A stretch of DNA of 64,000 nucleotides, from the NCBI GenBank assembly GCA_037379345.1, contig CM074524.1, positions 3,445,635 to 3,509,634 on the forward strand, given 5' to 3'. Below, in pieces: positions 3,699-58,227 of this stretch (positions are counted from its first letter, which is position 1; each line of letters starts with the position of its first letter). The stretch is from Perna viridis. Its lineage: Eukaryota. The notes below the pieces were generated by a model, which did no database searches, was not told the DNA's origin, and saw only the letters and a list, made by a program, of their open reading frames with translations. Both the position numbers and the translations under genes were made by a program.

Positions 3699-6600
3699 TT
3701 ACATTTCTGGAGGACTTGTTAACTCCCTATGCCTTGTTAGGTAACCTTTAACTCCAGCATGCAAAAATGGCAGGGCAGTTTCATCAAATATAGACTTATC
3801 ATCCATGTCCATCTTAGAAATTTTCAGCAGTCGCTTTGAATATGTTTTATTTCGTAACAGAAAACCTCTAAAAGCCGCCTGTAAAATGAGTAAGGATTCC
3901 TCTTTAAGAATAGCACTGTTTTGAATCTCATTTACGATCCTACGTGAGAATGTTTCTACTGATAACTCACTGTCATCATGAGAGTTACGTGTAACATCTG
4001 ACTGCTTTCGGTTTGTTTCGTGACTGGAGAAGGCTTCTGTCTTTTCCATTGGACTGATAGGGTACTCAATATCAGGGTCAACAAGGTCAGTTGAAACTGG
4101 GGAAGGTTCTTCAAATCGGCTACGATGTGTGTCTATATCATGTCTTAAGTATGAGTCTATTACTGTTGTTGTACCAACATGAAGATTTAGTTGCATATTA
4201 GGTGAAGGCTCTTCAAAGCGTCTATTTTCGTTTCTTACATCTTTACTAACCTGTTTATCAGTCTCATGCAAAGGAAATGGTTCATCATACCTCCTTAATG
4301 GACTTGGTTCTTCATATCTCCTGAAAGGAGATGGTTCTTCATGTCTCCTTAAATGTGCATCTGGAAGAGAGGATATTTCATCCAATTGTCTATGAGATGA
4401 ATGAAGAGCTGGGCTTCCTGCACTCCTTACAGGAGGTGAAGGTTCTTCAAATCGACGTCTGTCACTATCAAATCTCTCTTCTTCGAGACCTTCATGAAGA
4501 AAAAGAGATGGCTCCTCATACTGATTCAAAGGTCTGTGAGACTGTTGAGGTGTTTTGTACCTGGTAGATTCTCGACTACGGTACAGGTACTGTACAGGTG
4601 TATTATTTTCTTTCTGTCTTTCTGATTTTGCTGATTTACTATGCAGAATGTATTGAATCTTTTCGTCTTCCTGTTTGGTATTTTCTTCTTCAATTTCTTT
4701 GTCTGAGTGTTGTCGGTGATACGAAACTCGGACAGGAATATCTTCACTGACAAATGTTGATTCCCCACCATCATAAAATGAAGGTAAAATTCTATCAACA
4801 GTTTCATTATTCTGTTTTTCAAAGGAACAACTTATCTTAACCATATCAGGATTGTTCACAAATGGGGGAGGAGTGGGATGTTTTGGGAAAAATACTACAA
4901 CAGAAGAAGTTTCATTGTCATACTGGCACAACTTATGGGTTAACCTGCGAGTTAAATAGCCCCTGAAGAAAGATTGCAGATGTGAAGCAGCCATAAAGCG
5001 TGAACGTTCATGAAAAAATTGTTGAGATGGTTTAGTGGATTTTCTACGCCTAGACAGTAAGCTACGAAAACTCTCTTGCAAATGGGAAAAAGAGTCCACA
5101 TGAGCGATAGTCGAGCACGCAGTAGGGATAAATTGTTCCTTATGTTTATCTGCATCGATCACAAAAGTATGTTCTCTATGAACATTTGATAACGAAGCAT
5201 GATGTCCACTTGTGAGAGGTCGAACCGAACTGATTTTCCCAGTTGTAATCAAATCAAAATTTTCAGCTGAACCTTGAACAAACAAAGGATCTTTTCCATC
5301 AACTGCAACATTCCTATAAGGAACTGTCTGGGCCATTAGTTTTCTCCGAGACAAATATCCTCTGACATGGGACTGTATTTGAGTTGTTGCTTTTGACTTT
5401 TGTAACCAAACCTCATTTTTGTGCTGAAATTTCATAGTTTCATATTTATTTCTTTGTGAGTAACTACGATAACATGATTGAATTCTTACAGCAGCTGCAT
5501 GCATTTCAGCTTCATTTTTTAGTTTGACTGAAACTTCTTTACGAACAAGATATCCCTTAATGCTAGATTGCAACAATTCGAGTGCCAAATGTCTAGCTTG
5601 TAACTGAACATCCCTTCTCACTTTATATCCACGGAAATAAGATTGAACTTTAGTGGCAGCTAAATTTTTACGTTCAGTAGCAAGCGTTTCGAATTGTTGC
5701 CTTGCTTTAAAGCCACGGTACTCAGACTGGATTCTTGTAACAGCTCGTTTTTGCTCAAGGTAGCCCTTTCGAGATAAGTAACCACGAACTCCAGCTTGAA
5801 TTTTGGAGGCACAGCTGCTTTGTCTACTTATATTAGCTGAAATATTTCTCCTTGTTAGAAAACTCTGAAATTCTATCTGCAGTTCTGAAGCGGCTTTATG
5901 GTACCTAGCAAGGGCTGCTACTTTGCGTCGACAAATATGCCATCGCTCAACATATGCCCTAAAGCCTGACTGCAATACAGTAGCAGCAACGTCACATTTC
6001 AGTATTTGATGAAGTTTAACAAACGCAACTCTCCTGAAAAGGTACCCATGAAAAGATGCTTGGACCTTATCCAGAGAGTCTACGTAACCTAGCCTATTCA
6101 CAGGATTATCTTGACGCCAAAAATCCATTATCAAACGTTTATTTATGTCTCTACGCGCTAAAAAAGCACGCACATTTGCTTGAAGGAACAACAAAGCATC
6201 CGCTCTTTGTTCGTTTACCTTAATTCGATTGACTTTTTTCCTATCTCTATAACCACGATATCTTGCTTGTATTTTTGTTGCGGCATTGTCACGTTCGTGA
6301 ATGAGACCTAAAATGTCCATCACTTCTTCCTGCGCTACAGAACGAAGATGTAACAACTGTTTTGTATTTTGTCGTTTCTGTATGCGTCTCCGCACTAAAA
6401 ATCCCCTTGCTGCTGCCTGCATGAGGGTTACAGCATCAGTTTTCCCATCTAACCTCTTACTCTGAAATTTAGTGAAGTAGTTCGAATTAATAAATTTTCC
6501 CCTCCCATATATCCTACCACCACCAAAACAGGATTTGATAGTGTTTAGTTTTGAAACATACCATGATAACTCATTTTGTCTGGATTTTGAAGGTTGCAGA

Positions 6601-9600
6601 AAAGTGTTAATGAAACAGTTGTCAAATTTCTGCCTAAATAAGAACCCTCTAACACTTGCTTGAAGATGACTATGCAAATATATTTTCAACGACTTGGGGC
6701 AGGATGATTGTTTATCTACAGAAGACATGCTTTTGTAACAAGAACTTAAACTATTGACCAATTTGTGGGCTTTGTATGCAGCTTGGAGTATTCTTCCATC
6801 CTTAAGTTTTGAATTTATTTTATTTTCTTCATCATAGTTACACTTATTTATATCAAAAATGTCATTGCAAGTTTGTTGAAATTTGGTATTGCAGTTCAAT
6901 GAAGAAGCATTTGAACAGGAATCCTTTTTCAAACGCATGCTCTGTACAGACAGATTTTTAAAATTAACATTGTCTGAACTCTTTGCATTTTCTACCAACT
7001 CAACAACCTTTCTAGCAGATTCTTGTCTCACTATTGGAATTTCAATTTCTTCTTTTATTGAGAACAACTTATCAGTGCTCCTTGAAAAAGACCTTGACAT
7101 TTTACTTCCTGACCTTGACACAACTGATCTCTCACAGTTCGTTTCATTTTTAACAACAGTTACAACTTCACTGAAATCACCAATATCAGATCTGCTCGCT
7201 TTCTCAACAAAATAATCATCATCAATTTCAGATTTACTTTTAACAATTTCAAGAACTGATTCAACGTCTTTTTGAACAGTACAATTTGTATTGCTCCAAA
7301 CTCCACAATCATCTGTTCGTTCAACAGAATTCATTGATACAGTGGCACCCTGTAGGCTATGACCACTAACAAACCCAGATTCAACAGAAAACTGTGCGTG
7401 ATCACTATCAGAATCTAAAAAACCTTTCTGCTCAGACTTTGTTTGAGGTGAATATGAAAAATTACCAAATTTATGGTAGCTATCCTGACAATTGTCTGTC
7501 TTATTCTCCTCAGTATTACTATGAACATTTTGAATCTCATTAACAAATCTTGCACACAGAACCCCCTCTAAGGCTGACACTATATAATGTACATTATTAT
7601 CATTTAATTCCCTAAGTTGTTTCTTGTGCTCCCGCCTTGTTTTTCTGGCCTTTAAAGCAGCCTGGAGTTTTGTAACGGCAGTATTCAAATCCATTTGAGA
7701 AGGGTTAGTTTTTTGTTTACATTTAACGAAGATTCCTTTAACAGTTGAACTATGTTTTATTGGAGAAACCTTACAAGACTCTATGATAAAATGTTCATCA
7801 TGCTTTATTTGAAGTCTGGTTAGTTTACCCTTAAATCTAGCTTGTAAATCATCAACAGCTTTTAATTTCTTTAACAAAACCCTTGCTCTATAACCTTTGT
7901 AATAAGATTGAATTTTTACTGCTGCAATTTCACATTCATGTTCAACCCTTGACTTCTTACATATAACCCTTGACTTATAACTTCTAAAATACCACTGAAT
8001 TTTCACAGCTGCTGCATTTAGTTTTTGATTCTGAGGGGTGACATTTAACGCGTCAGTTTTTACTCTTGACCTATGACCTCTAAAGATAGATTGAATTTTC
8101 ACGGCTGCTTTGTTTCTTCTTTTATTTTCCAAATTGGACTTTAAATCATGGAAGATAACCCTTGATCGACGACCTTTAAAAATTGACTGAATTTTAATAG
8201 CTGCTTCATTTGGCTTTTTAACGTCAAGTTCAGCCTTCATTTTTTGTTTTAAAATCCTTGTCATATGATGTCTAACGAAAGACTGCATTTTCAAAGCCGC
8301 CTTATTACGATTATCCTTCATTTCATTATACTCCCGACGCGACATATAACCCCTAAAAATAGTCTGAATTTTAATAGCTGCATCATTTCGTGTTTTTCTT
8401 TCATGATTTAGTTGCCATGAGTAACAACTGTGGGAGGTTTTTAGAATAAAATCGACCATACTTCTAGCCTCGTCATTTAAACATTGTTTTAAATTGCTCT
8501 GTCTTATTCTATATTTTCTGAATGTGGTCTGAATTACAGATGCAGCTTTTTCTATCTTCCACTGTCGATTTCGACTCCACCTACCCCTAATAACTGACTG
8601 AAGCTTTGTAGCCGCATCATTCCTTATTTTAACTTTTTTACAGAGCCATAATCTAAAAGTCTTTTGAATAATTGAAGCAGCTCTAATTTTCATTAGCATA
8701 TTTTCCCTGTAAGTCTTGAAATGTCTCAGTATAATATTTGCAGCCTCATTTCTTTTATCATTTTTCACTCTCATGTACTTTACAAAAGCTTTTTGTATTA
8801 AAATAGCTGCTTGGTTCTCGGTATCTTGACATGCATTTCTTTGTTTTTCTTTAAAAAATGCTTTGAAACTTCTTTGAATAACCCTACAAGCCTGTTCCCT
8901 ATCCACGCCTGTCTGTACTTTTAATACCGATTTTTCAGTGTTTTCTTTGATACTTTTGAAGTTTTTATTTACTAGGGCCTCATCAGTTCCACTTTTCTCA
9001 GCCAACATATGAAAACTGTTTCTTCTACCAATGAAAGCATGGAAAGCTGCTTGTACAACGGTGGTTGCCGTTTCTGTCTTCCCTTTTTTGTATTCCTTAA
9101 ATGCGGACTGAATAGTCTGTGCAGCTATATTATTGACATTACTTTCAGGACTTAGCAACTCTTCATTTTGACATTTAGGATTCTTCAACATTTCTTTAAA
9201 AAGAGAAGTTTTATCTTCATCTTCAATTTCTTTCCCTATCAAAGTTATGTCTTTTTTTAACTCCCCATCCACTATTTCAATTCTAGACACTGCCCCAAAA
9301 GTGACTTGTTTTTTGACAGTTAGACGACTATTTACTTTATTATCCTTTCTAACAAGATAACCCCTAAAAATTGCTTGAATTTTAGTTGCTGCATCAGCAC
9401 GCCAAATATCCTGGACTTCAATATCATCTTCCATGATTTGATATTCTAGACGTTTACGGCATATCATACCCCTAACTGCAGCTTGTAAATTTGTGACATC
9501 ATCAATGTTTGTTTCCAATCGAATTTTCAAAAATGACCAAAACCTAGACAGAAAAGATTTTACTGAAGCTTGCAGATATGTGGTAGCCAAATGCTTCACT

Positions 9601-12479
9601 TTGATCAGTTCTTGTTCTATTTTCTCATCTTCAATTTCATTTAAAATATGAACATCATGTTTTTTCCACTCAATTTCAAGGGTATCATCTAAACTACAAC
9701 TTCCAGTTCTACTTGTTTTAAGAACGGACTCTGTGGTAAAACTTTCCATTTCCCCATGACTACCCAAAAGACCTAAATTAGAAAACCTACCACAGCGACT
9801 ATCAGCATATATTCCCTCCCTTTTGGCCAGATCAAAGTTAACAGTGAAACTTTCTCCATCACCAGGAGAGCGAATGTTTAAATCAGTCTCAAAGAACTCA
9901 TCACCAGAATGGTTGCTAGCCTGACTATCAGTGGCTGATCTGAGTCCACTACTGACTCTGTTGATTGAACTTGATTTGTTCACATCAAAAAATGGAAAAC
10001 TCTTATGTCGTTTTGACTTTGCAATTAAAATAGGGAACATTTTATCAAGATCTGTATCTAACATTTCAGGGAAAGTTTTATTTTTAATCATAAAACTAGA
10101 AAAGGGAGTCTTATAGTTAAATTTTTCTTCCACAGTTTTATTTCGACTTGAATTAACAACATCAACCCCTTGATCAGTTTCTGTATTTATGTTCAGGTTG
10201 TCAGTAAAACGTTGTGATTTGTTATGGGCAATAGCCGGTAAAGTATAAACTTGTCTGGGTGGTGCAAAATAACTAGATGAACCAAACAGTTTACAGGTAT
10301 GCAATCTACCTAAAGTTTTAGATCTTTTCAATGATTTTTTTATTGATTTCTCATCCAAGGGTACTAATGATTCAAGAATAAAGGAAAATGTTTTAGCCAG
10401 TCCCTTTCTATCACCAGCAACAAAAGAGTTAGATTTCTTATGCAATAGCTTCGACATCATTGCCTTCAATTCACTCTTATGATCCTTCTCAACCCTGTGT
10501 TTATACATTCTACATTCATTCATTTCCTTAACTTTATCTAACACTTTATCTTTTCTACTGCCTTCATGACAGTATGGAGAAGTTTCATTTTCATCATCAT
10601 GGCAAGTTTCACTACTAGATTCAAACTTGTTCTGGCTGTTATTAGAATTGTCACTAGCAAAATTACTGCTGAAATCATTGTATGGAGGAAGGATTTCATT
10701 TTCACAATTTTCTCTATACGATTCAGACCTCGTAAGCATAGTGCTTTTACTACTCATTTTAAAAAGCAGACTTCGGTTATCTATCCCAGAGTCTATACTG
10801 ACTCCATCATTTTGCCTTAACGGTACATTACATTGCCTAATGATAACATTACTTTGCCTACTGGAATTATTAATTTGCATCATTCCAACACTACTTTGCC
10901 TACTGGAATCATTATCTTGCCTCAATTCATCATTACTTTGTCTACTGGAATCATTATCTTGCCTTTCAACATAATTTTGCCTACCGGAATCATTATCTTG
11001 CCTCATTTCATCATAATTTTGCCTACTAGGATCAATATCTTGCCTAAAATCAACATTATTTTGCCTACTAGAAACATTATCTTGCCTAATGTAAACATTA
11101 TTTTGCCTATTGAAAACATTGTCTTGTTTAATGTCAACATTACTTTGCCTACTGGAATTACTATCTTGCCTAGTTTCATTATAACATTGCCTACTGGAAT
11201 TGTAATCTTGCCTCATCTCAATATTACTTTGCCTACTATCATCATCTTGCCTAATATCAATATCACTTTGCCTACTGACTAAACTATCCTCTCTATGTTC
11301 CACATTACTTTGCATACTGAGAACATTTTCTTGCTTAAAATCAACATCAATTTGACCACTTAAAACTTCCTCATGCCTTATTTCAACATCACTTTCCCCA
11401 CTTACTATATTGTATTGCCCTTTACCACTTTCATTTTGCCCACTTGGTAAAATTCCTTGCCTAATATTATCATCACTATGCCTGACTGCTAAATTGACTT
11501 GCCTACTAACAACATCATTTTTTGTATATCTATCATCATGCTGTATGCTATCTACACAAATCTGTCTAGACAGATCTAACCTTATCTGACTTAACGATTT
11601 CATCAGATCATTGCCTTGACTTTCATTTAAACTTATTGATGTACCCCCTCTACTCTTTATAGATTTAGCTGACTGTGACACAGTACTCGATATTCTTTCC
11701 TCAGAAACCCTACCAATACTATTATTACATCTATCAGGGTTGGACATATTATAATTTTCTCTGAAAGCCTCGACTTTAGAATTTTCATTAACTGTAGTAG
11801 GTTTAGCAAGATCACCTTTATTAACTAAACCAATTAACGAGGGGGAGTGATTGTTACCAGAATATACCTTTTTCTTAGCCACCTCTTTTCTGGCTTGGTG
11901 GCCCCTGAATCCAGCCTGTATTTTAGTGGCTGCCTTTTCTTCTTCTTCATGTTGAACCAGTTGTTTTTTCTTTGTTTGCACTTCCTTTCTAGCTTGATGT
12001 CCTCTAAATCCTGCTTGTATTCTCGTAGCTGCTTTTTCTTCTTCTTTCTTGTTATCGTCTCTTTTCTGTTTTCTTTGTTTAATATCCCGTCGAGCTTTAT
12101 GCCCACGGAATCCAGCTTGAATTTTAACAGCTGCTGCTTCCTCTTCTGTGTTCTTTTCCATCCTTTGTGTCTTCTTCTGTTTAATTTCTTCTCGGGCTCT
12201 ATGGCCGCGGTAACCAGATTGAATTTTGACTACAGCTGCCTCTTCTTTTGAATTCTTGAAATCACGTACCTGTTTTTTCTGTTTGATTTCCTTACGAGCT
12301 TGATGCCCGCGGAAACCTGCCTGTATCTTTGTTGCAGCTTCATTCTCTTGTTTCATCTGTTTAGATTTCATTGCATCATCCTGCTTCTTTCGATCGTCGT
12401 CTGCTTTCTTCTTTTTAAGGTCATTGACCTCCTTCCTGGCCTGATGACCTCGATAATTGGCCTGGATCTTGGTCGCAGC
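3699..12479 (-). CDS. Giant terminal coding exon (8,781 nt, 2,926 aa) with about 40 IQ/IQ-like motifs
   Basis: The 2,890-aa ORF extends 36 codons upstream in frame to the acceptor tatttctaaaag|GCTGCGACC. The junction with the previous exon builds 'DEHK|AATKIQANYRGHQARK'. IQ motifs counted by eye in clusters of about 6, 19, 16 and 2. Confidence 0.9.
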   Translation of the reverse strand, partial: AATKIQANYRGHQARKEVNDLKKKKADDDRKKQDDAMKSKQMKQENEAATKIQAGFRGHQARKEIKQKKQVRDFKNSKEEAAVVKIQSGYRGHRAREEIKQKKTQRMEKNTEEEAAAVKIQAGFRGHKARRDIKQRKQKRDDNKKEEEKAATRIQAGFRGHQARKEVQTKKKQLVQHEEEEKAATKIQAGFRGHQARKEVAKKKVYSGNNHSPSLIGLVNKGDLAKPTTVNENSKVEAFRENYNMSNPDRCNNSIGRVSEERISSTVSQSAKSIKSRGGTSISLNESQGNDLMKSLSQIRLDLSRQICVDSIQHDDRYTKNDVVSRQVNLAVRHSDDNIRQGILPSGQNESGKGQYNIVSGESDVEIRHEEVLSGQIDVDFKQENVLSMQSNVEHREDSLVSRQSDIDIRQDDDSRQSNIEMRQDYNSSRQCYNETRQDSNSSRQSNVDIKQDNVFNRQNNVYIRQDNVSSRQNNVDFRQDIDPSRQNYDEMRQDNDSGRQNYVERQDNDSSRQSNDELRQDNDSSRQSSVGMMQINNSSRQSNVIIRQCNVPLRQNDGVSIDSGIDNRSLLFKMSSKSTMLTRSESYRENCENEILPPYNDFSSNFASDNSNNSQNKFESSSETCHDDENETSPYCHEGSRKDKVLDKVKEMNECRMYKHRVEKDHKSELKAMMSKLLHKKSNSFVAGDRKGLAKTFSFILESLVPLDEKSIKKSLKRSKTLGRLHTCKLFGSSSYFAPPRQVYTLPAIAHNKSQRFTDNLNINTETDQGVDVVNSSRNKTVEEKFNYKTPFSSFMIKNKTFPEMLDTDLDKMFPILIAKSKRHKSFPFFDVNKSSSINRVSSGLRSATDSQASNHSGDEFFETDLNIRSPGDGESFTVNFDLAKREGIYADSRCGRFSNLGLLGSHGEMESFTTESVLKTSRTGSCSLDDTLEIEWKKHDVHILNEIEDEKIEQELIKVKHLATTYLQASVKSFLSRFWSFLKIRLETNIDDVTNLQAAVRGMICRKRLEYQIMEDDIEVQDIWRADAATKIQAIFRGYLVRKDNKVNSRLTVKKQVTFGAVSRIEIVDGELKKDITLIGKEIEDEDKTSLFKEMLKNPKCQNEELLSPESNVNNIAAQTIQSAFKEYKKGKTETATTVVQAAFHAFIGRRNSFHMLAEKSGTDEALVNKNFKSIKENTEKSVLKVQTGVDREQACRVIQRSFKAFFKEKQRNACQDTENQAAILIQKAFVKYMRVKNDKRNEAANIILRHFKTYRENMLMKIRAASIIQKTFRLWLCKKVKIRNDAATKLQSVIRGRWSRNRQWKIEKAASVIQTTFRKYRIRQSNLKQCLNDEARSMVDFILKTSHSCYSWQLNHERKTRNDAAIKIQTIFRGYMSRREYNEMKDNRNKAALKMQSFVRHHMTRILKQKMKAELDVKKPNEAAIKIQSIFKGRRSRVIFHDLKSNLENKRRNKAAVKIQSIFRGHRSRVKTDALNVTPQNQKLNAAAVKIQWYFRSYKSRVICKKSRVEHECEIAAVKIQSYYKGYRARVLLKKLKAVDDLQARFKGKLTRLQIKHDEHFIIESCKVSPIKHSSTVKGIFVKCKQKTNPSQMDLNTAVTKLQAALKARKTRREHKKQLRELNDNNVHYIVSALEGVLCARFVNEIQNVHSNTEENKTDNCQDSYHKFGNFSYSPQTKSEQKGFLDSDSDHAQFSVESGFVSGHSLQGATVSMNSVERTDDCGVWSNTNCTVQKDVESVLEIVKSKSEIDDDYFVEKASRSDIGDFSEVVTVVKNETNCERSVVSRSGSKMSRSFSRSTDKLFSIKEEIEIPIVRQESARKVVELVENAKSSDNVNFKNLSVQSMRLKKDSCSNASSLNCNTKFQQTCNDIFDINKCNYDEENKINSKLKDGRILQAAYKAHKLVNSLSSCYKSMSSVDKQSSCPKSLKIYLHSHLQASVRGFLFRQKFDNCFINTFLQPSKSRQNELSWYVSKLNTIKSCFGGGRIYGRGKFINSNYFTKFQSKRLDGKTDAVTLMQAAARGFLVRRRIQKRQNTKQLLHLRSVAQEEVMDILGLIHERDNAATKIQARYRGYRDRKKVNRIKVNEQRADALLFLQANVRAFLARRDINKRLIMDFWRQDNPVNRLGYVDSLDKVQASFHGYLFRRVAFVKLHQILKCDVAATVLQSGFRAYVERWHICRRKVAALARYHKAASELQIEFQSFLTRRNISANISRQSSCASKIQAGVRGYLSRKGYLEQKRAVTRIQSEYRGFKARQQFETLATERKNLAATKVQSYFRGYKVRRDVQLQARHLALELLQSSIKGYLVRKEVSVKLKNEAEMHAAAVRIQSCYRSYSQRNKYETMKFQHKNEVWLQKSKATTQIQSHVRGYLSRRKLMAQTVPYRNVAVDGKDPLFVQGSAENFDLITTGKISSVRPLTSGHHASLSNVHREHTFVIDADKHKEQFIPTACSTIAHVDSFSHLQESFRSLLSRRRKSTKPSQQFFHERSRFMAASHLQSFFRGYLTRRLTHKLCQYDNETSSVVVFFPKHPTPPPFVNNPDMVKISCSFEKQNNETVDRILPSFYDGGESTFVSEDIPVRVSYHRQHSDKEIEEENTKQEDEKIQYILHSKSAKSERQKENNTPVQYLYRSRESTRYKTPQQSHRPLNQYEEPSLFLHEGLEEERFDSDRRRFEEPSPPVRSAGSPALHSSHRQLDEISSLPDAHLRRHEEPSPFRRYEEPSPLRRYDEPFPLHETDKQVSKDVRNENRRFEEPSPNMQLNLHVGTTTVIDSYLRHDIDTHRSRFEEPSPVSTDLVDPDIEYPISPMEKTEAFSSHETNRKQSDVTRNSHDDSELSVETFSRRIVNEIQNSAILKEESLLILQAAFRGFLLRNKTYSKRLLKISKMDMDDKSIFDETALPFLHAGVKGYLTRHRELTSPPEM

Positions 12480-15400: not shown

Positions 15401-18400
15401 GAATAATGACAGAAAAAAGCAAAGACCTCTGTAAATGTGGCCAGCTTCAGATTCTCTAAAATTGGCAATGGAGTGGGTTCAGTCAGATCTGCATTTTAAA
15501 CAATGGCAGAGCAACAACTGTGTGAAAATAGATATAAATTACACATTTTTATGGTTTATTTAATGCATGTGAAGGTGACAATAACATCACATAAGACTAA
15601 AGCTATCAAAATTAATTACTGAGTTCTCATACCATATTTCAAAACATTCTTATGAGAGGAAAAGCATATTTTCCCTTTCTATTGCCTAAAAAGGAGATGG
15701 GGGAAACTCCTTTGTTTGCTGTAAAAGAACATAAGAAAGGCACTATTTGTATTTTATCTTATTGATAATGTGACAAAAATTACTAAAGAGGGAACCTTGA
15801 AAGAGAGGTGTTAGAGCCTGAGAATCATAATATATTTTATGCAGCCATACAGACAATACATACTACACATATAAAGGAAATAATAAAGAGGAAAGAATGA
15901 ATGATAAATTAAAGATAAAGTGCATAGAACCATGACAACGATTAGGATGTGAAGAAAATGACACAAAAAGTACAGACATACTACAGCAGACAAAGACAGA
16001 TGAACAGCATTTACAAATCGAAGCAGTAAAAAGAATGAAAGAAGGTCAGACATATTGAACACAGAAAACATTAAGTAATGACAAAGTAATTTTTTGTTGG
16101 TGTCAATTGATAGAACAGCTGAATAACAAGTACATATCAAAACAGCAAAGAAAAAATAAAAGGATACACTTTTGTGACATATGTAAATAAAAAAATAATA
16201 TGACAAATTGGTGACAAAAGCAGATGAGAGACAATGAAAAGTAGAAGTAAAGAAAGAATAGTAGATTTTCTAGCATGCAACACATTTAGTCGAAGAAAAT
16301 AGAATGATCTGGCCATTAATTTTTTCAACAGATCAGATATAAAAAAATTAACACAGAAACAAAACATCAACAAAAACTTACAAATTGCATAGTTTTTTCA
16401 CTAAATTATTGTTCTTTTTTCACATATTTTAGTTCAACTTTTCTTTATTCAATTTTGACATATTTGTTTTTATTAATACTTTATTTTAAATGAATTAGTA
16501 CATTGTATATAGGTTTTCATGACAAAAATGTACAAAAAGATATGACGACTTCATCAAATTAGAATGCAGGAAAGGTAAAAAATGTAACAGATGAAACAAA
16601 GAAAGAAAGAAAATAGAAGAAACCCTATATTTTGCTTTTTACACCCAAGGCTCTATTTATTGAATCCCTTTTTAAATGAACTGGATTTGTTATTGATTTC
16701 CTAACAAACATGTTTATGACATCTATAATTTAAAAGCAAGTATTTATCTCCACCCCCCCATCACTATAAGCTATTTTTGTATAAAAATTAGGACAAAACT
16801 AATGAAGCAAAATGAAGTACAAGAGAGAGAGTGTTTTGTGTTTGAAAGGATTTTTTTTACTCTAAACACAAAAAGGTAATAATTTAAAGTTCATTTCAAT
16901 GGAAAATTATATCCACAATGAAAAGTGGAAATTATATCCACAATTTACATGGAAAATCATATCCACGATTAAAACATCAACCAATTGATTAGAAACATAG
17001 CAATTTCTTTTTAGTCACTACCTTATGTTCATCAGAAGGTGATGGAACTTTGTTATCCTTGGCCGGAGACTTCTTCCCAGTATCATTAGGTGTCGAAGCT
17101 CGCACAGTATCATAATTATTAAAGTTACGATCATCTTGTTTCGGAGGCGTGTCCTTTCTATTTTTATTAGAGGTTTGTTGAGGTGGTGCTTTACTATTCG
17201 ACTTATAAGTGCTGTTCTGTGACGTTTTGCTCAATGAATTACTAGGTGATTTTTGGTCACCCTTGACCCCATGTGACCTGTCACCATTTTGTTGAGACGT
17301 CTTACTGTGCGAGTGGTCAGGTTGTTTTTGCCGATTGTTCGTCTCCTATTGGGGTGTATCATATCAACAGTTAGGAACACACAGCAACCAATGTGAACAA
17401 TCAAACACTAAATGGGTCAACACAAACCAAATGATAAAATGTGAATTATATTTTGGCCTCACTTCAACACCAAGCATGTATAATTTGTTAGTAAGGACAA
17501 CATCATGAGAGCTACAGCTATGGTGCTACTGTGTACAGTGAAAAATATCATGCAAAAAAGTGTGTTAAGACCTCCTACCATTTTTTTTTACCTTCCTACT
17601 TAACAATTTTCTGTGTAATTAATGTTAAGTCCTGCATTGAAAAATATTTAACTCATTCTTTCTTTTTGTTTTGTTTTATTTGTTACAAAACTAATTTAAT
17701 TGAACTAAAATTTTCATATCTTTTACTAGATGGTATGTGTAAAAAAATCAAGTAAATTTCAGTTGTCTCCACTATTTTTTACTACAGTTTTAACTGTCTG
17801 AATTTTGTCCTAGCAAAGCAATCTCCCTAGAAGAAATAACGATCTTCTAGTATGTAACTGTCTTTGAAAACAAATAGCTCAATCTCATAGAAGATAAATT
17901 AAATCATTCAATGCTTCACTTCAAATTATATAAAAAATAGCCCAAAGAAGATCAGTATTAAAATCAAAAGATTTGAACGTGCAAATAATTCAGATAAAAA
18001 AAGGCTGAAAGAATACTGTGACTGTAATACTTAAAACACAAGCCAAGAGCAGCAGAAAATAATCAGACAAGCATTTAGATACTGAAAATACTGAAAATAC
18101 TGTGTCCAAAAACAAAGAAATTTTTAAAAAAATCTTGGTGTCAGTTTAATACTGGTTTCAGTTAGAATCATGCTAAAAAAAAAAAGAAAAAGTGATAAGT
18201 TGAACATGTGTGTCCTTAAACATTAAAATTCTTTCAGAAAGATATATTTCCAATAAAATGAATCAATGGTTTGGAAAGTAATGACATAACATAAAACAGT
18301 TAACTAATTTTTACCAAAAAAATTTTCTATAATTTTTTTCAATAAAGATCAATTAAAAACCAGTCATGTTTTCTAGTTTTCAATTAGTTTTCTATCTTGT

Positions 18401-48400: not shown

Positions 48401-49077
48401 ATGAAATAAAAATTTCAGATATTTTGTGGGAAATTTGATATTTTTAAACCTGATTTTATGAACTTTTTTGCAAATTTTCGCATATTTTTGCATGGTTTCT
48501 ATGGTAACCCTATATGCTGTGGGTAATTTTTTTCCAGAAAATTTTTACTACATCCTGAAGGCCTTGGCTTCAGCTATTTCTAGATATATAGATTTACAGA
48601 TGCTTGACAATTTTTTAAAGTGATAAATGTTACAAAGCATCAGATTACAAGACCAAAATTAGGCAGTTCTACAATACTGTGGAGTGATGGCTCAACATAA
48701 ACTATGACATCATCAGTAATATAGTAATAGACTGATTACCGATCAGATCGCTTCTAACTCTTTACTGCACTGGTGTGAGTGAAAAAAAACTGATCTTGCA
48801 AAATTTACAGTAAGTGCTTACATAGGCAACAATATGAATGTAATAAATAGCACTCTTCATGTTTATTTATTGCTTAGTTGAGACCCCCAGCTTTCTTTAT
48901 GACTCAACTAAAAAATCTTTTTTGTATTTTTTTATCATGCACATATATCATTTATTTTGGTAGATATATAGTTCAGTATACATTTTATACTTACGATATT
49001 TTACAACTTTGTGTGTTAACAGTGTTATATTTAGGCTGTATATTTTCAAAAGTTTTGTTGTGACGTGCTGGTACAAT
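3699..49077 (-). CDS. DCDC2: Multi-exon DCDC2-like gene (DCX domain + DCDC2 C-terminal motif) with a giant IQ-repeat terminal exon; 5'-incomplete in window. Exons: 48995-49077, 47195-47326, 46398-46553, 45942-45974, 43376-43408, 28993-29061, 27995-28083, 27055-27179, 24057-24146, 21933-21965, 17022-17345, 3699-12479
   Basis: Every internal junction is GT-AG. Exon start phases are 0,2,2,2,2,2,2,1,0,0,0,0 and chain with no stop; the total of 9,948 nt is divisible by 3. Peptides resemble DCDC2 as I recall it: DCX 'LFHMDGRPVDDVRQIENDGLYVAV', 'TLPPI', and 'DDGGVFKAKGQNKDTRGAREVRDTGDTKVDLPIDQ'. The symbol means DCDC2-like; orthology was not tested. Confidence 0.82.
4095..4525 (-). repeat. Coding dispersed motif R(F/Y/H)EEPSP, about 7 copies
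   Basis: QYEEPSL, RRFEEPSP, RRHEEPSP, RRYEEPSP, RRYDEPFP, RRFEEPSP and SRFEEPSP in the ORF translation. Confidence 0.8.
10810..11510 (-). repeat. Coding degenerate tandem repeat, 14-aa unit (2 x 7 aa) SRQSNxxxRQDNxS
   Basis: Repeated plus-strand 'ttgcctactggaatcattatcttgcct' and translated SRQ..RQD units. About 10 clear copies plus degenerate ones. Confidence 0.85.
12744..13884 (-). mobile_element. 5'-truncated, decayed Penelope-like retroelement (RT domain + 3' non-coding end)
   Basis: Motifs YDFSTLYTSIPH (about 13884-13850), MGTNCTPLLADLF, FRNIDDVL (YIDD mutated) and LYDKRDDFSFRIVNFPF, with frameshifts. The 3' part recurs at 37276 and 59975. Confidence 0.85.
14363..14517. repeat. Minisatellite, 37 bp x 4
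   Basis: tcaggatac at 14367, 14404, 14441 and 14478. Confidence 0.9.
17022..17345 (-). CDS. 324-nt exon, low-complexity S/K/Q/P-rich linker (ETNNRQKQ...VPSPSDEHK)
   Basis: cccaatag|GAGACG...CATAAG|gtagtg. Phase 0-0. Overlaps ORF 16989..17234 in the same frame. Confidence 0.8.
20239..20331. other. 93-nt imperfect palindrome (46-bp arms)
   Basis: catcctccaaagccagggtcttgagtccacctttactctctcaaat-g-atttgagggagcaaagatggactcaaaactctgactcaggaggatg; 38 of 46 positions pair Watson-Crick. Confidence 0.85.
21933..21965 (-). CDS. 33-nt exon DERIRKEKQNK
   Basis: taatttacag|GATGAA...AACAAA|gtaaga. Phase 0-0. Confidence 0.72.
22379..23421. mobile_element. Non-autonomous DNA transposon (MITE), about 1.04 kb, 22-bp TIRs
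   Basis: Left taggtcacacattcatggatca versus right tgatccatgaatatgtgaccta (1 mismatch). The left end is duplicated at about 22320-22372, and three ~34-bp repeats lie inside the right end. Confidence 0.75.
24057..24146 (-). CDS. 90-nt exon EEINDGDEKEAKVPSGVELSRQPSEASEQQ
   Basis: cttcttag|GAAGAG...CAGCAG|gttagg. Phase 0-0, GC-rich island. Confidence 0.85.
25613..25692 (+). mobile_element. 56-bp 5'-truncated SINE/LINE tail flanked by a perfect 12-bp TSD
   Basis: cggacgcagttg at 25613-25624 and 25681-25692 flanks ...tatagctgaaatattgc...gacgttaaaccccaacaaacaaa. Confidence 0.7.
27055..27179 (-). CDS. 125-nt exon with the DCDC2 C-terminal motif DDGGVFKAKGQNKDTRGAREVRDTGDTKVDLPIDQVRAEEVK
   Basis: tttgtttacag|ATGATGG...GTCAAA|gttagt. 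Phase 1 to 0. Similar to human DCDC2 'DEGIFKAGAERSETRGAAEVQEDEDTQVEVPVDQRPAEIV' (recalled). Confidence 0.9.
27516..27876. repeat. Minisatellite, 41 bp x ~9
   Basis: Unit taatgtggtatcatggctcatacttagggaaaatatcacag. Confidence 0.92.
27995..28083 (-). CDS. 89-nt exon RKRNQVNGVPVKAAKHTKRTPGRQADYDR; NAGNAG acceptor (28083 or 28080)
   Basis: tttttgtttatag|CAG|AAAAAG...AGAG|gtacgt. Phase 2 to 1. Confidence 0.82.
28719..29020. repeat. Minisatellite, 44 bp x 7, built from an exon 3' end plus its splice donor
   Basis: Unit gagaacttacctagtttctggatatgagctgacagaatggttgg. The last copy overlaps exon 28993-29061. Confidence 0.92.
28993..29061 (-). CDS. 69-nt exon TLPPIESKKHSPDHSVSSYPET
   Basis: gtttttcag|AACTTT...ACTAG|gttagt. 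LPPI motif as in DCDC2 'SSLPPIVGSRK'. Phase 2-2. Confidence 0.8.
32392..32584. mobile_element. Short MITE 'TACTGT...ACAGTA'; related copy at about 55999-56181
   Basis: Termini tactgtgaaa/tttcacagta. The internal cccatgaaaaccac.aaaat...gtactc.acaaa is shared with the 56-kb copy. Confidence 0.6.
32746..32820. repeat. Tandem repeat, 25 bp x 3
   Basis: Unit ataacaataaaggtgttagYaaagt. Confidence 0.85.
35244..36503. repeat. Highly homogeneous minisatellite, 42 bp x 30
   Basis: Unit atagataatagaggaagacaaStgYcctgttctggtgttttc. 1,260 bp equals exactly 30 units, with only two variable positions. Confidence 0.97.
37276..37612 (-). mobile_element. Non-coding 3'-end copy of the Penelope-like element at 12744-13090
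   Basis: Colinear match: aatcaagggaacca...atgagcaactc..actccac...ggagcatggaccaggtgc...gtaagc.tcctctgcttttc...aaaggaaaactatgaca...gttcatga. Confidence 0.8.
37787..38376 (+). mobile_element. Helentron-associated non-autonomous element (HINE/pearl-like) with an internal 165-bp tandem unit
   Basis: Subterminal aaaaca(t)atgtctcc repeated near both ends; 165-bp unit starting at 37983 and 38148; short ggac/cact tract; 3' hairpin gtctcctc..ggggagagac followed by ataa. Confidence 0.7.
39644..39879. repeat. Minisatellite, 59 bp x 4
   Basis: Unit cttcagactacaaccaaacctgtcctgaacaagttataacaaacacgggtgcacagtga. Confidence 0.92.
39941..40174. mobile_element. MITE family 'TAAGGCCAAA...TTGGCCTTA'; related copies at 29721-29929 and 60902-61103
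   Basis: Terminal taaggccaa/ttggcctta, subterminal tgtttcctgc/gcaggaaaca, and internal cctacctaccc shared by the copies. Confidence 0.7.
40253..40377. mobile_element. Small fold-back element/MITE
   Basis: tacacaggcaaatttatttcacgtga versus tcatgtgaaataatttagcttgtgta; internal gtgaaa repeats. Confidence 0.5.
43376..43408 (-). CDS. 33-nt exon SSLNGPVGRH (possibly a cassette exon)
   Basis: ctatgctttag|ATCAAG...CATAG|gtaatt. Phase 2-2, open in the required frame, GC-richer than its flanks. Confidence 0.6.
   Translation of the reverse strand: MKSKRSSWKA
44144..44354. mobile_element. Fold-back MITE with 32-bp TIRs and GAG...CTC ends
   Basis: gagctagacctatagtaagggacacaactctt versus the reverse complement of aagagttatgtcccttactgcaggtctatctc (4 mismatches). 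No clear TSD. Confidence 0.65.
44962..45316. mobile_element. MITE with ~28-bp imperfect TIRs
   Basis: tggccaatcaaaattcatttaaagattc versus gaatctttaaataaatttcatatggcca. Confidence 0.6.
45942..45974 (-). CDS. 33-nt exon FTETKYLWKD
   Basis: tttttgtag|ATTCAC...GACAA|gtgagt. Phase 2-2, no stop. Confidence 0.75.
46398..46553 (-). CDS. Exon (156 nt): C-half of DCX domain, LFHMDGRPVDDVRQIENDGLYVAVDQFAKFEHGDYTPHGKKPLSVPLSPRY(K)
   Basis: attttag|GTTATTC...TACAA|gtaagt. Matches the DCX consensus L(Y/F)xxDGxxVxxxxxLExGxxYVAVxxxxF. Confidence 0.9.
47195..47326 (-). CDS. Exon (132 nt): N-half of DCX domain, VFLNKEFEKPPLKVTLDPLQQANTREMEKAVRLKCQEAYFRFD(K)
   Basis: ttttctttttcag|AGTTTT...GATAA|gtaagt. Phase 2-2, open frame. 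Confidence 0.88.
47828..47968. repeat. 11-bp tandem repeat (tcaatRatcag-like)
   Basis: About 12 copies of tcaataatcag/tcaatgataag. Confidence 0.85.
48052..48686. mobile_element. MITE-like element with CACT...AGTG termini
   Basis: Perfect 11-bp TIR cactccacagt/actgtggagtg with weaker extension to about 34 bp. No TSD seen. Confidence 0.55.
48995..49077 (-). CDS. Exon (83 nt): inter-DCX linker IVPARHNKTFENIQPKYNTVNTQSCKI(S)
   Basis: ttttctttccag|ATTGTA...ATATC|gtaagt. Phase 0 to 2, joins the next exon as TC+A=Ser. Resembles the DCDC2 linker 'VKPVIHSRINV...PCTIF'. Confidence 0.85.
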
Positions 49078-49583: not shown

Positions 49584-51413
49584 GAATAAATTCTCTTAAC
49601 ACTTCCTCTGTGAGTCTCTTAACTAGTTACATAATTGATATCTAATTCATTTTTTATATTGGGGAGTAAGATATCAATATAACCAATATTGACTCACGTT
49701 ATAAATATTGATATATATTGACATTAATGTATAATTTTATTCCATTCATAAATGACAAAATCTATTGGGGGTTGTCAAAATATTATGCAATGGTGTTTTA
49801 TGTGTAAACAGATATTTAGGATTATGTTGGGCAATCAATTTGGGTAAAACAGGGTAGACTTATAATTGAAGTCATGCTGAAAATCTGCAACTTTAGAAGT
49901 TGAAATGATAGATTGTTCTAGACTTGGGTAAACTATTATATTCATACTAGCAAAGATGCCATAAACCAACTTTATTTAAGACATCAATTCTATTTCACTG
50001 CTACTTATTTTCCCAACTTGCATATACCAAACAACTATTCCATAATAATAGGACTCTTCTGCAACAATTTGTTTTCTATGGGTTTTCTTGCTGGCCAAAA
50101 CAGTAAAAATAAATCACATCCAAAGTAGATTGTGTGTAGAGTTTGAACAAGTACAAGTACCAAGAAGACATGCACAAACTTTATGGGTAAAATGTTTTGC
50201 AGAAAGTAGAAGTGGGCAGTACAATCCATATGGTATTATCTTACAACTCTATATCTAAGTTAACATACAAGGAGTAAAGTGATGGTGAAAATGACATTAT
50301 TTTAAAGATTGTTTATCATTAGACACATTTAACAGTTGCATCAGAGTCAAGAAATTTCTTGTATTTGAAGATTAGCCATCAATCTAGAATTGATATTTGA
50401 AAGTATACATTAACTAAAGTTGTGACCATCAATGAACAACTGACATCTCTAAATCTTCAATACTAAATACAAAATGCCTAGTTATCTCTATTTTAACACC
50501 AGCATTATATATCATTACCAGTTATCTACCAAACCAATCAGTGCTGATCCTATATAATGCTGATAATTGATCATTACACTTATAATTTTTAATTTCATTT
50601 TTTAACACCTGTTTTAGAAATGACATCAATATTAATATATATTCCATGTCAGAGTAATAGGTGCACAAATATAGAAACTTGGTCCAAAGAAATTGTTCAG
50701 CTAAATATCGGTTGGCTAGCCAAGTAAATCTGGTTGCACCTCCAACTCATTAATTGAACAAAAGCATGTAACCCTTGGCGATCATTTACCTGAAAGGCAA
50801 TTAAAAGAAATTGGAAGCATGTAGAGCGATTAACCGAGAAACAATGTTTTCATCATGAAACCCATACCAACCAATCAATAAGATGAATAGTAAACGATGC
50901 CCTTTATCAAGGGTTCAGTATTCAAGTTTACTTGTAAGTAAAAGTATAAAGATGAGACAAGAAAAAGCAAGATACACCAAACCTCATTGTCATTGTTACA
51001 AATGTAACTTGTCAGTCAAAGGATGAAGCAAGAAACTGATCAAAACAACTGCCACAATATACAATCATTGAAAGAAAATAAAAACACCTTTTTTTTCTAT
51101 GCAGCAACTTGGACTTCACTGAAAATGAGGTTGCAATTCAAATGTATGCCATTGTATTAGTTACTAGTAAAGTACACATTTTCAAAGATTAAAAAAGTAG
51201 CATATCTTAAAATTTCAGAGCAACCAATTCATTTCTCAGCAGAAACTTAAAAACCTTCAACAAGAAAGTATTGTACCATGGAAATTCCATAAAATATTCA
51301 AATCCATGTTATATCAAAGAACCTGGTAAAAAACCTGCTTCAAAATCCAGCCTCCAAATTAAGTAGGTATTATGGACAGAAGGTAATTATGACTACCCTA
51401 CTTCAGATCAATA

Positions 51414-57362: not shown

Positions 57363-58227
57363 ACCTACATCCTATGTTACCCAGAAGAGAAATGACCAAT
57401 CCTTTGTTGCCTAGAAGAGAAATGACCAACATCCTATGTTGCCCAGAAGAAAAATCATCAACCGTATGTTGTCCAGAAGAGAAATGACTAATCCTATGTT
57501 GCCCAGAAGAGACATGATCTATCCTATGTTGCCCAGAAGAGAAATGACTTATCCTATGTTGCCCAGAAGAGAAATGACCTACATCTTATGTTGTCCAGAA
57601 GAGAAATGACCAATCCTATGTTGCATAGAAGAGAAATGACCTACATCCTATGTTGCCCAGAAGAGAAATGACCTACATCCTATGTTGCCCAGAAGAGAAA
57701 TGACCAATCCTTTGTTGCCCAGAAGAGAAAAGACCAATCCTATGTTGCCCAGAAGAGAAATGACCTATCCTATGTTGCCCAGGAGAAATGACCAATCCTA
57801 TGTTGCCCAGAAGAGAAATGACCAATCCTATGTTGTCCAGGAGAAAAATGACCTACATCCTATGTTGTCCAGAAGAGAAATGACGAATCCTATGTTGCCC
57901 AAAAGAGACAAGACCTATGCTATGTTGCCCAGAAGAGAAATGACCAATCCTATGTTGCCCAGAAGAGAAAAGACCAATCCTATGTTGCCCAGAAGAGAAA
58001 TAACCTACATCCTATGTTGTCCAGAAGAGAAATGACCAATCCTATGTTTCCCAGAAGAGAAATGACCTACATCCTATGTTGCCCAGAAGAGAAATGACCA
58101 ATCCTATGTTGCACAGAAGAGAAATGACCAACATCCTATGTTGCCCAGAAGAGAAATGACCTACATCCTTAGTTGCCCAGAAGAGAAATGACCAATCCTA
58201 TGTTGCATAGAAGAGAAATGACCAATC
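57363..58227. repeat. Minisatellite, 30/32 bp x ~28
   Basis: Unit atcctatgttgcccagaagagaaatgacca, with 32-bp 'acctac' variants. Confidence 0.95.

What the first reader, a model, noticed from the sequence alone, without database searches (positions are those of the whole stretch)
3699..49077. DCDC2-like doublecortin protein spliced in frame to a ~2,900-aa, ~40-IQ calmodulin-binding tail
Seen: eleven small exons (DCX domain, LPPI motif, DCDC2 C-terminal motif) phase-chain without a stop into the 8.8-kb IQ exon. The last junction itself forms the IQ context 'EHK|AATKIQANYRGH'. Established: vertebrate DCDC2 is a ~480-aa ciliary microtubule protein without IQ arrays, and ASPM couples CH-domain microtubule binding to a long IQ array mostly on one large exon. 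No CH or ASH domain is visible here. Inference: a DCX-anchored, Ca2+/calmodulin-loaded microtubule or axoneme scaffold that converges on ASPM architecture, possibly in cilia, sperm or neurons. An automated pipeline could split it or label the large ORF 'ASPM-like'. I cannot tell whether it has been described before.
Basis: partly seen in the sequence, partly recalled or inferred. Interest (0 to 1): 0.85.

Follow-up and report, generated by a model that had tools for sequence, protein, structure and literature searches.

The report
Mussel DCDC2 gene with giant IQ tail
A real, expressed gene for a microtubule-binding DCDC2-type protein can end in one 8.8-kb exon that adds about 34 calmodulin-binding IQ motifs; smaller versions of this layout are already predicted in snails, worms and rotifers, but I found no paper describing any of them.

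Summary
The core observation holds. The 2,926-codon exon holds 23 strict, 34 relaxed or 41 loose IQ motifs.

The start codon with the first DCX domain, and a second small exon, lie 10.7 kb and 1 kb beyond the window end. The full model has 13 exons and 3,430 codons, with no internal stop.

The IQ exon is an alternative 3' end, not a fixed tail. It sits inside the last intron of a DCDC2-family gene. A related mussel makes a 498-aa IQ-less form that skips it for a distal exon, which is conserved here about 4.9 kb past the IQ stop. One run also shows probable polyadenylation in the intron after exon 12.

DCX+IQ is not unprecedented. Pfam confirms it in predicted proteins of Pomacea, Owenia, Dimorphilus, Tubulanus, Adineta, Sinanodonta and Solemya. 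I found no paper describing such a protein.

It is not ASPM: no CH or ASH domain, and the only ASH hit is on another contig.

Microtubule anchoring, calmodulin loading and a ciliary role are inferred, not shown. The scan earlier noted another IQ-array gene (Sp17 type) in this genome.

The parts
48995..49077 (-). Exon 3 (83 nt), the linker between the two DCX domains.
   Evidence: Canonical CAG| and |GTAAGT sites, and the phase fits. It is 41% identical to residues 122-148 of the relative's transcript product P0289, E=1e-4.
47195..47326 (-). Exon 4 (132 nt), N-terminal half of the second DCX domain.
   Evidence: Canonical sites. Weak but colinear match to P0289 residues 150-180, E=0.08. The domain length fits P0017 and P0289 only when this exon is joined to 46553 (by eye).
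46398..46553 (-). Exon 5 (156 nt), C-terminal half of the second DCX domain.
   Evidence: Pfam DCX scores 25.3 bits against a cut-off of 22, and 24.3 bits in the genome search. It is 49% identical to P0289 residues 194-246, and the homology starts exactly at the TTTTAG| acceptor.
45942..45974 (-). Exon 6, a 33-nt micro-exon (FTETKYLWKD).
   Evidence: Canonical sites and a length divisible by three. It matches 'SQTKYLWKE' in P0289.
28993..29061 (-). Exon 7 (69 nt), TLPPI motif. Its 3' part and donor are the first copy of a 44-bp minisatellite.
   Evidence: 96% identical to P0289 residues 256-279. The tandem repeat spans 28689-29021.
27995..28083 (-). Exon 8 (89 nt).
   Evidence: 83% nucleotide identity to the relative's transcript L007. 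The phase fits.
27055..27179 (-). Exon 9 (125 nt), the DCDC2 C-terminal signature motif (GGVFKAK...DLPIDQ).
   Evidence: 93% identical to P0289, 57-66% to the bivalve proteins P0004 and P0017, and 60% to Conger conger DCDC2 residues 306-345, E=2e-13.
24057..24146 (-). Exon 10 (90 nt), a probable cassette exon.
   Evidence: Canonical sites and phase 0 to 0. It matches P0004 residues 384-401 at 56%. It is absent from the relative's transcript P0289.
21933..21965 (-). Exon 11 (33 nt, DERIRKEKQNK).
   Evidence: In X21, 119 RNA reads run on from 17345 into a 30-letter sequence found only at 21933-21962. One X5 contig carries exon 11, exon 12 and the start of the IQ exon.
17022..17345 (-). Exon 12 (324 nt), a low-complexity linker. 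Both borders are proven by RNA.
   Evidence: Joint 12478|17021 and loose ends at 17345.
15550..17021 (-). Probable intronic read-through and 3'UTR of a short isoform. It would add 10 residues after exon 12 and stop at 16991-16989.
   Evidence: In X21, stranded depth of 25-65 runs from the donor down to about 15553 and then drops to 2. A poly(A) signal ATTAAATAAA lies at 15564-15555. In X1, X5 and X11 the depth here is only 0-4, against about 100 on the exons.
3699..12479 (-). Exon 13a, the giant alternative terminal exon: 2,926 codons plus the stop.
   Evidence: Open frame. RNA junction. RNA-behaving runs hold 87-95% of its sampled words. The relative's exon is open for 2,709 codons with the same acceptor and the same stop position. 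A poly(A) signal AATAAA lies at 3368.
11880..12479 (-). IQ cluster 1: six near-identical IQ modules of the AATKIQAGFRGHQARKE type.
   Evidence: 102-bp repeat. 70% identical to the relative. Matches the IQ pair of the Pomacea DCDC2-like protein P0214.
10845..11402 (-). Coding 42-bp repeat (13.4 copies), giving a 14-aa RQ/SN-rich low-complexity repeat.
   Evidence: It is poorly conserved and gap-rich against the relative.
7632..9575 (-). IQ cluster 2, roughly 15-20 motifs (exon residues 969-1616).
   Evidence: Colinear with P0004 residues 1141-1630.
4944..6665 (-). IQ cluster 3, about 15 motifs (exon residues 1939-2512).
   Evidence: 51-69% identical to the relative. Colinear with P0004 residues 2136-2592.
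3849..3884 (-). Last IQ motif, near the C-terminus.
   Evidence: The C-terminal bin is 70% identical to the relative.

Best explanation
This is one minus-strand gene of the DCDC2 family (two N-terminal doublecortin domains plus the DCDC2 C-terminal motif) in a mussel-like bivalve genome. It starts 10.7 kb beyond the window end and has alternative 3' ends.

In the long isoform, exons 1-12 (504 codons) are spliced to a single 8.8-kb terminal exon. That exon adds 2,926 residues: about 34 IQ motifs in three clusters, separated by low-complexity stretches that are probably disordered. Other isoforms lack the IQ tail. One skips exon 12 and the IQ exon for a conserved distal exon about 4.9 kb past the IQ stop. 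Another probably polyadenylates in the intron just after exon 12.

Inferred mechanism: the DCX domains dock the protein on the microtubule lattice, most likely ciliary or flagellar as for vertebrate DCDC2. The IQ helices carry many calmodulin or calmodulin-like light chains. The choice of 3' end would then switch the protein between a plain microtubule-binding protein and a microtubule-anchored calmodulin scaffold or reservoir.

Shown: exon structure, the exon 11 - exon 12 - IQ splicing, conservation, and domain content. Inferred: physical linkage of exon 1 to the IQ exon in one molecule, microtubule binding, calmodulin binding, and location.
For: Splicing:
- The 17022-to-12479 joint appears in four runs from four studies. 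Exon 12 and the start of the IQ exon have matching depth in X1, X5 and X11, and the unique (non-repeat) parts of the intron lie at 0-6.
- Exon 11 is tied to exon 12 by 119 reads.

Internal exon, not a separate gene:
- The first IQ motif lies upstream of the first in-frame ATG (12371).
- The acceptor and the sequence AATKIQANYRGHQARKEV are conserved in the relative's genomic contig, which also has no in-frame ATG before them.

Gene model:
- All 13 exons have AG/GT borders. Their concatenation is 10,290 nt with no stop.
- The relative's complete spliced transcript (P0289 on L007) is colinear with exons 1, 3, 5-9 and 11 and with the distal exon.
- The 3' part of L007 (its distal exon) lies on the same contig as the relative's IQ ORF, 7.4 kb downstream, at 97.8% identity.

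Coding constraint:
- 31 of 34 IQ motifs align with an IQ motif in the relative.
- IQ cores are 62% identical against 42% elsewhere, and carry few gaps.

Family:
- DCX1 scores 78 bits and matches microtubule-bound doublecortin 4atu at E=8e-14.
- The C-motif is 60% identical to fish DCDC2.

Same architecture elsewhere:
- Pfam DCX+IQ in Pomacea, Owenia, Dimorphilus, Tubulanus, Adineta, Sinanodonta, Solemya and in a 3.3-kb Logan contig encoding a single 860-aa ORF, taken to be a transcript.
- Atlas clusters with DCX 100% and IQ 97-98% in Mollusca and Rotifera.
Against: - No single read or contig spans from a DCX exon to the IQ exon in this species.
- The links exon 1 to 2 to 3 and exons 3 to 11 rest on splice logic and the relative's transcript.
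- Exon 2 has no significant alignment on its own, and exon 4 is weak.
- In X21 the IQ junction has only 6 reads against a depth of about 125 on exon 12, so the long form is a minority there.
- The distal-exon isoform was not tested with this species' reads.
- Calmodulin binding, microtubule binding and ciliary location were not tested.
- The one fold attempted (exon residues 751-968, single sequence) gave pLDDT 29.7 and says nothing either way.
Confidence: 0.72

Rival explanations
1. There are two genes. A short DCDC2-like gene and an independent IQ-array gene lie next to each other, and the observed junction is occasional read-through or chimeric splicing with no protein-level meaning.
For: Short IQ-less isoforms exist: the relative's P0289 and the read-through in X21. 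In X21 only 6 reads cross the junction. Gene callers file the relative's IQ ORF alone, as P0001.
Against: In X1, X5 and X11 the spliced contig has the same depth as both flanking exons, and the unique parts of the intron are nearly empty. The conserved coding sequence starts exactly at the acceptor, with the first IQ motif before any in-frame ATG, in both species. Exons 11 and 12 contain no ATG codon in frame. DCX+IQ occurs in one ORF on the contigs P0159 and P0172 (ORFs filling 2.4-3.3-kb contigs, so taken to be transcripts) and in RefSeq models of other spiralians.
Confidence: 0.07
2. The long isoform is real, but the tail is not mainly a calmodulin scaffold. It could bind other EF-hand light chains, or act as a long spacer, ruler or disordered tether whose IQ-like repeats are only helix-forming units.
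For: Long low-complexity stretches separate the IQ clusters. Only 23 of the roughly 40 motifs fit the strict consensus. Binding partners were not tested.
Against: IQ cores are the best-conserved parts of the exon, and 31 of 34 positions are kept in the relative. Pfam IQ scores E=3e-125. The six N-terminal modules closely fit the neuromodulin/neurogranin/Sp17 type of IQ, which binds calmodulin; that comparison is from my own knowledge and was not tested here.
Confidence: 0.15
3. The large ORF is an ASPM paralogue or a captured ASPM fragment.
For: Most named database hits to the IQ exon are ASPM, at 22-30% identity over 11-27% of the query. Like ASPM, the IQ array sits on one large exon.
Against: The exon has no CH, ASH or ASPM C-terminal domain. 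The genome's only ASH hit is on contig C7. The matches are confined to the repeated IQ motif. The closest full-length relatives carry DCX, not CH.
Confidence: 0.02

Closest known systems
Vertebrate DCDC2 (doublecortin domain-containing protein 2; ciliary microtubule-binding protein)
   Same: Two N-terminal DCX domains. The conserved C-terminal motif is 60% identical over 40 residues to Conger conger DCDC2. Relatives are named 'DCDC2-like' or 'DCDC2C-like' in RefSeq.
   Different: Vertebrate DCDC2 is about 480-600 aa. The fish example has no strict IQ motif. This gene can add a 2,926-aa tail with about 34 IQ motifs through an alternative terminal exon.
Spiralian predicted DCX+IQ proteins: Pomacea XP_025090944.1, Owenia CAH1774299.1, Dimorphilus CAD5114161.1, Tubulanus XP_074657000.1, Adineta UJR16130.1, Sinanodonta ACJMK2_000398, Solemya ScPMuIL_009150
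   Same: The same order of parts: DCX, DCX, C-motif, acidic or low-complexity linker, then IQ. Pfam confirms it. The two bivalve models are colinear with this gene through three IQ blocks.
   Different: Most have 1-12 IQ motifs and 490-860 aa. The window gene has about 34 IQ motifs and 3,430 aa. I found no paper on any of them. The alternative 3'-end arrangement is documented here only for this species and its relative.
ASPM / Asp (abnormal spindle)
   Same: A microtubule-associated protein with a very long IQ array, largely on one giant exon, that is loaded with calmodulin (established knowledge).
   Different: ASPM uses ASH and CH domains. None is present here, and the only ASH-domain locus lies elsewhere. 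The IQ array here is broken into three clusters by long low-complexity stretches.
Neuromodulin (GAP-43), neurogranin, PEP-19 and Sp17-type IQ modules
   Same: The six N-terminal modules (AATKIQAGFRGHQARKE) resemble this IQ type (my own knowledge). Copepod proteins with an RIIa (Sp17-like) docking domain plus IQ arrays are among the best hits to this block.
   Different: Those are small proteins or carry an RIIa docking head. Here the anchor is a pair of DCX domains.

Membership tests
DCDC2 family | Two tandem N-terminal doublecortin (PF03607) domains | tested here: met
   DCX1 scores 78.2 bits over positions 2-60, on exon 1 outside the window. The C-terminal half of DCX2 scores 24-25 bits against a cut-off of 22. 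The N-terminal half of DCX2 is placed only by a weak colinear alignment.
DCDC2 family | Conserved C-terminal motif after the DCX pair (GGVF[KR]AK...DLPIDQ) | tested here: met
   60% identity to Conger conger DCDC2 residues 306-345, E=2e-13. 57-93% identity to molluscan relatives.
DCDC2 family | Binds microtubules and localises to the ciliary axoneme | not testable with these tools
   The only indirect evidence is that DCX1 matches microtubule-bound doublecortin 4atu at E=7.7e-14.
IQ calmodulin-binding motif proteins (PF00612) | Matches to the IQ consensus above the curated cut-off | tested here: met
   E=3.1e-125, 396.8 bits, 18 stretches pass individually. Regex counts are 23, 34 and 41 against at most 5 in shuffles.
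IQ calmodulin-binding motif proteins (PF00612) | Actual binding of calmodulin or EF-hand light chains | not tested
   No complex prediction or experiment was run. This is inferred from the motif and its conservation.
ASPM / Asp | N-terminal ASH domain (PF15780) | tested here: not met
   There is no ASH domain in the IQ exon. The only ASH hit in this genome is at G000:C7:43883720-43884004.
ASPM / Asp | Calponin-homology domains (PF00307) before the IQ array | tested here: not met
   Pfam scans of the IQ exon and of the open frames holding exons 3-5, 9, 10 and 12 show only IQ and DCX. Exon 1 hits DCX. The other small exons match only DCDC2-like relatives.
Spiralian DCX+IQ 'DCDC2-like' group | Colinear DCX, DCX, C-motif, linker and IQ in one product | tested here: met
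   Colinear tblastn matches of P0004 and P0017 to exons 1, 5, 9, 10, 12 and the IQ exon. Pfam confirms both domains in nine relatives.

The most novel reading that the evidence does not exclude
Choice of 3' end acts as a tissue switch. It turns a ciliary or flagellar DCDC2 into a 3,430-aa, microtubule-anchored carrier of about 34 calmodulins, serving as an axonemal Ca2+/calmodulin store or ruler. Three tandem DCX-encoding first exons (all with an ATG, all ending in phase 2) might add a second, 5' layer of choice. This would be a so far undescribed way of placing calmodulin on microtubules, possibly shared by Spiralia and expanded in bivalves.
Probability: 0.25. Interest if true: 0.7.

Novelty: new variant of a known kind. 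Interest (0 to 1): 0.5.

Why it matters
DCDC2 is a human ciliopathy and deafness gene, and its partners in Ca2+ signalling are unclear. An invertebrate lineage in which the same protein family carries its own calmodulin-binding array suggests a direct link between DCX-type microtubule binding and Ca2+/calmodulin. That link can be tested in the abundant cilia and sperm of mussels.

For annotation, this locus shows two ways automated pipelines go wrong. They split the gene (exon-1-only and IQ-only ORFs are filed as separate proteins), and they label the tail 'ASPM-like'.

The nested giant alternative terminal exon, conserved between two mussels, is also a clear case of isoform choice changing protein size roughly six- to seven-fold.

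Tried and rejected
- The search for homologous proteins with the DCX part of P0004 (region 1-420) found only P0004 itself. This is a limit of the word index, not evidence of absence.
- The phmmer search of 1.8 billion representatives with exon 1 listed no protein over 914 aa among the best 150. It therefore gives no census of long-tailed forms. Nine of the 150 carried IQ-like motifs by regex, and one of those (the fish Conger) is a chance match.
- Exon 2 against P0289 by BLASTP gave no alignment. The exon is kept on splice sites, phase and a weak tblastn match to two relatives.
- I rejected longer versions of exon 5 starting at 46635 or at ACAG|ACC. They have poor acceptors or give a DCX2 domain of the wrong length.
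- AlphaFold on exon residues 751-968, the only conserved stretch without IQ motifs, gave pLDDT 29.7 from a single sequence. No fold search was made.
- My last homology search, with the upstream DCX exon at 83.8 kb, returned only exon-sized ORFs. These include Mytilus galloprovincialis at 66% identity. It could not tell alternative first exons from separate genes.
- Four literature searches found no description of a DCX+IQ protein. The one paper holding both 'DCX domain' and 'IQ motif', PMC3498115, treats them in unrelated proteins.
- The spliced product was not sent to any search or fold tool. Exons were searched one by one by reference. The concatenation was made only inside a script, to check frame and stops.
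- No calmodulin-complex prediction was run.
Full report
**What is in the window**

The minus strand carries one open frame from 12482 to 3702. It is 2,927 codons stop to stop, and the first ATG is at 12371. Pfam finds only IQ motifs in it (PF00612, E=3e-125, 18 stretches pass individually) and no CH, ASH or other domain.

Counting by consensus gives these numbers:
- 23 strict motifs ([FILV]Qxxx[RK]Gxxx[RK]), against 0.05 in composition-matched shuffles.
- 34 relaxed motifs, against 1.3 in shuffles.
- 41 loose motifs, against 0.8 in shuffles.

The motifs fall into three clusters at exon residues 1-200, 969-1616 and 1939-2512, plus one near the C-terminus. Low-complexity stretches separate them. 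One is a 42-bp coding repeat at 10845-11402. The window has no N.

**The key splice is real**

I laid four runs from four studies on 12000-17600. All four skip 12480-17021, which reads GT..AG on the minus strand:
- X21: 6 stranded raw RNA reads with 6 different starts.
- X1, X5 and X11: one contig each, at depths 115, 128 and 85.

In X1, X5 and X11, exon 12 and the start of the IQ exon have similar depth, and the unique (non-repeat) parts of the intron lie at 0-6. These runs therefore behave as RNA, and the long form dominates in them. They also hold 67-95% of the sampled words of the whole 8.8-kb exon.

In X21, 119 reads run on from 17345 into a 30-letter sequence that occurs once in the window, at 21933-21962. 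That defines the 33-nt exon 11. One 568-nt X5 contig carries exon 11, exon 12 and the first 210 nt of the IQ exon.

The window is G000:C14:3445635-3509634. A six-frame Pfam DCX search of the genome finds only half a domain inside the window (46475-46555). It also finds three complete DCX domains on the same strand, 10.7, 19.6 and 36 kb beyond the window end.

I fetched that flank. The two bivalve DCX+IQ proteins (Sinanodonta P0004, Solemya P0017) align their N-termini best to the nearest of the three, at 38-40% identity, E=2e-16. That exon opens with an ATG preceded by an in-frame stop.

A 498-aa protein, P0289, from a related species gave the decisive guide. It is a complete ORF on a 2,247-nt contig, L007, which I take to be a spliced transcript because it matches the exons of this locus only. 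It is colinear with exon 1 (70% identity), exon 3 (41%), exon 5 (49%), exon 6, exon 7 (96%), exon 8, exon 9 (93%) and exon 11.

With it I placed 13 exons, all with AG/GT borders and fitting phases:

| Exon | Position | Note |
|---|---|---|
| 1 | C14:3520595-3520294 | outside the window; ATG and first DCX domain |
| 2 | C14:3510706-3510631 | outside the window; 76 nt |
| 4 | 47326-47195 | N-terminal half of DCX2 |
| 5 | 46553-46398 | C-terminal half of DCX2 |
| 6 | 45974-45942 | 33-nt micro-exon |
| 7 | 29061-28993 | TLPPI motif |
| 8 | 28083-27995 | |
| 9 | 27179-27055 | DCDC2 C-terminal motif |
| 10 | 24146-24057 | probable cassette exon |
| 11 | 21965-21933 | 33 nt; tied to exon 12 by RNA reads |
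| 12 | 17345-17022 | both borders proven by RNA |
| 13a | 12479-3699 | giant IQ exon |

Concatenated in a script, only to check frame, they give 10,290 nt, or 3,430 codons, with no internal stop. The joined product was not sent to any search or fold tool; exons were searched one by one by reference.

Exon 2 is the weakest exon. Its sites and phase are good, but it has only a weak tblastn match. Exon 4 is also weak.

**The IQ exon is an alternative terminal exon nested in the gene**

P0289 goes from the exon 11 equivalent straight into a K/P/D/T-rich tail and a 3'UTR. In this genome, that tail and UTR match an open frame and flank about 4.9 kb downstream of the IQ stop. The coordinates are C14:3444469-3443951 for the coding part. 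The UTR is 74% identical over 370 nt.

In the relative, the same distal exon lies on the same genomic contig as its own giant IQ ORF (P0001, L006), 7.4 kb downstream of it, at 97.8% identity to the transcript. Both species therefore keep the giant exon inside the last intron of a DCDC2-like gene. The relative demonstrably makes an IQ-less isoform.

X21 also shows a third 3' end. Stranded coverage of 25-65 continues past the exon 12 donor down to about 15553 and then drops to about 2. A poly(A) signal ATTAAATAAA lies at 15564-15555. This form would add ten residues and stop at 16991-16989. In X21 it outweighs the IQ junction, which has 6 reads there.

**The IQ exon is an internal exon under constraint**

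- In both species the conserved coding sequence begins exactly at the acceptor with AATKIQANYRGHQARKEV. No in-frame ATG precedes this first IQ motif.
- The relative's exon is open for 2,709 codons and stops at the same place.
- 31 of 34 IQ motifs align with an IQ motif in the relative.
- IQ cores are 62% identical with 17 gapped positions. The rest is 42% identical with 370 gapped positions.

**Family placement**

- DCX1 scores 78 bits on Pfam and matches microtubule-bound doublecortin (4atu) at E=8e-14.
- Exon 9 is 60% identical to residues 306-345 of a fish DCDC2, E=2e-13.
- It is not ASPM. There is no CH or ASH domain, and the genome's only ASH hit is on contig C7.

**How widespread is the architecture**

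- Two bivalve gene models of 2,657 and 1,963 aa have DCX+IQ. They are colinear with this gene, including three IQ blocks.
- The ESM Atlas holds clusters with DCX 100% and IQ 97-98% of members in Mollusca (113 members, named 'DCDC2-like isoform X6') and Rotifera (60 members).
- Among the 150 best representatives found with exon 1, nine have IQ-like motifs after the C-motif. The named ones are Pomacea, Owenia, Dimorphilus, Tubulanus and Adineta, plus the fish Conger, which is a chance match. P0159 is an 860-aa ORF with 12 IQ motifs on a 3.3-kb Logan contig that I take to be a transcript.
- Pfam confirms both domains above cut-off in all but one of the proteins I submitted.

The layout is therefore a recurrent spiralian form of DCDC2. 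What stands out here, and in the two bivalve models, is the size of the tail. Four literature searches found no description of a DCX+IQ protein.

**Organism**

Names are coded. The best named hit to a neighbouring exon is Mytilus galloprovincialis at 66% identity. I take it to be a bivalve related to Mytilus but not Mytilus itself.

**Mechanism**

*Shown:* the gene structure, the exon 11 - exon 12 - IQ splicing, alternative 3' ends, conservation of the IQ positions, and DCDC2-family membership by sequence.

*Inferred from established knowledge of DCX domains, DCDC2 and IQ motifs:*
- The DCX pair docks on the microtubule lattice, probably in cilia or flagella.
- The IQ helices bind calmodulin or calmodulin-like light chains.
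- The choice of 3' end switches the protein between a plain microtubule-binding protein and a microtubule-anchored multi-calmodulin scaffold.

The only fold attempted (exon residues 751-968) was uninformative, with pLDDT 29.7.

**Verdict**

The finding is a real but not unprecedented architecture: a bivalve expansion of an uncharacterised spiralian DCDC2+IQ form, delivered by a giant alternative terminal exon.

Noticed in passing
outside the window: G000:C14:3529269-3529573 and 3545867-3546198 (minus strand; loci L002 and L004): Two more DCX-encoding exons lie upstream of exon 1. Each starts with its own ATG and ends at a GTAAG donor in the same phase (2), at the same place after the domain as exon 1. 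No DCX2 or C-motif exon was found between them (tblastn with relatives). They could be alternative first exons of this gene or first exons of tandem paralogues. The 83.8-kb exon is conserved in Mytilus galloprovincialis at 66% identity, as an exon-sized 'hypothetical protein'.
   Followed up: partly
window 28689-29021: A 44-bp minisatellite (7.6 copies) begins inside exon 7. It repeats the 3' end of the exon together with its donor site, so several downstream copies read SP(N/D)HSVSSYPETR followed by GT. These may be decoy or alternative donors.
   Followed up: no
window 12744-13883: Intron 12 holds a very highly repeated and expressed element. Summed contig depth reaches up to 2.8e5 in RNA runs, on both strands, and many reads run on into unrelated sequence. 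It includes an open frame at 13157-13819 that I read by eye as reverse-transcriptase-like, though it has no Pfam hit.
   Followed up: no
window 35244-36505; 51412-52652; 57369-58227: Three large intronic or intergenic minisatellites: 42 bp x 30, 46 bp x 27 and 30 bp x 28. The first is open in three frames and produces spurious ORFs of 388-436 aa.
   Followed up: no
window 12063-12479: The six N-terminal IQ modules hit copepod proteins that combine an RIIa (Sp17-like) docking domain with IQ arrays (P0002, P0003). The scan has separately noted an Sp17+IQ-array gene in this same genome. Multi-IQ 'calmodulin carrier' proteins may be a recurring theme here.
   Followed up: no
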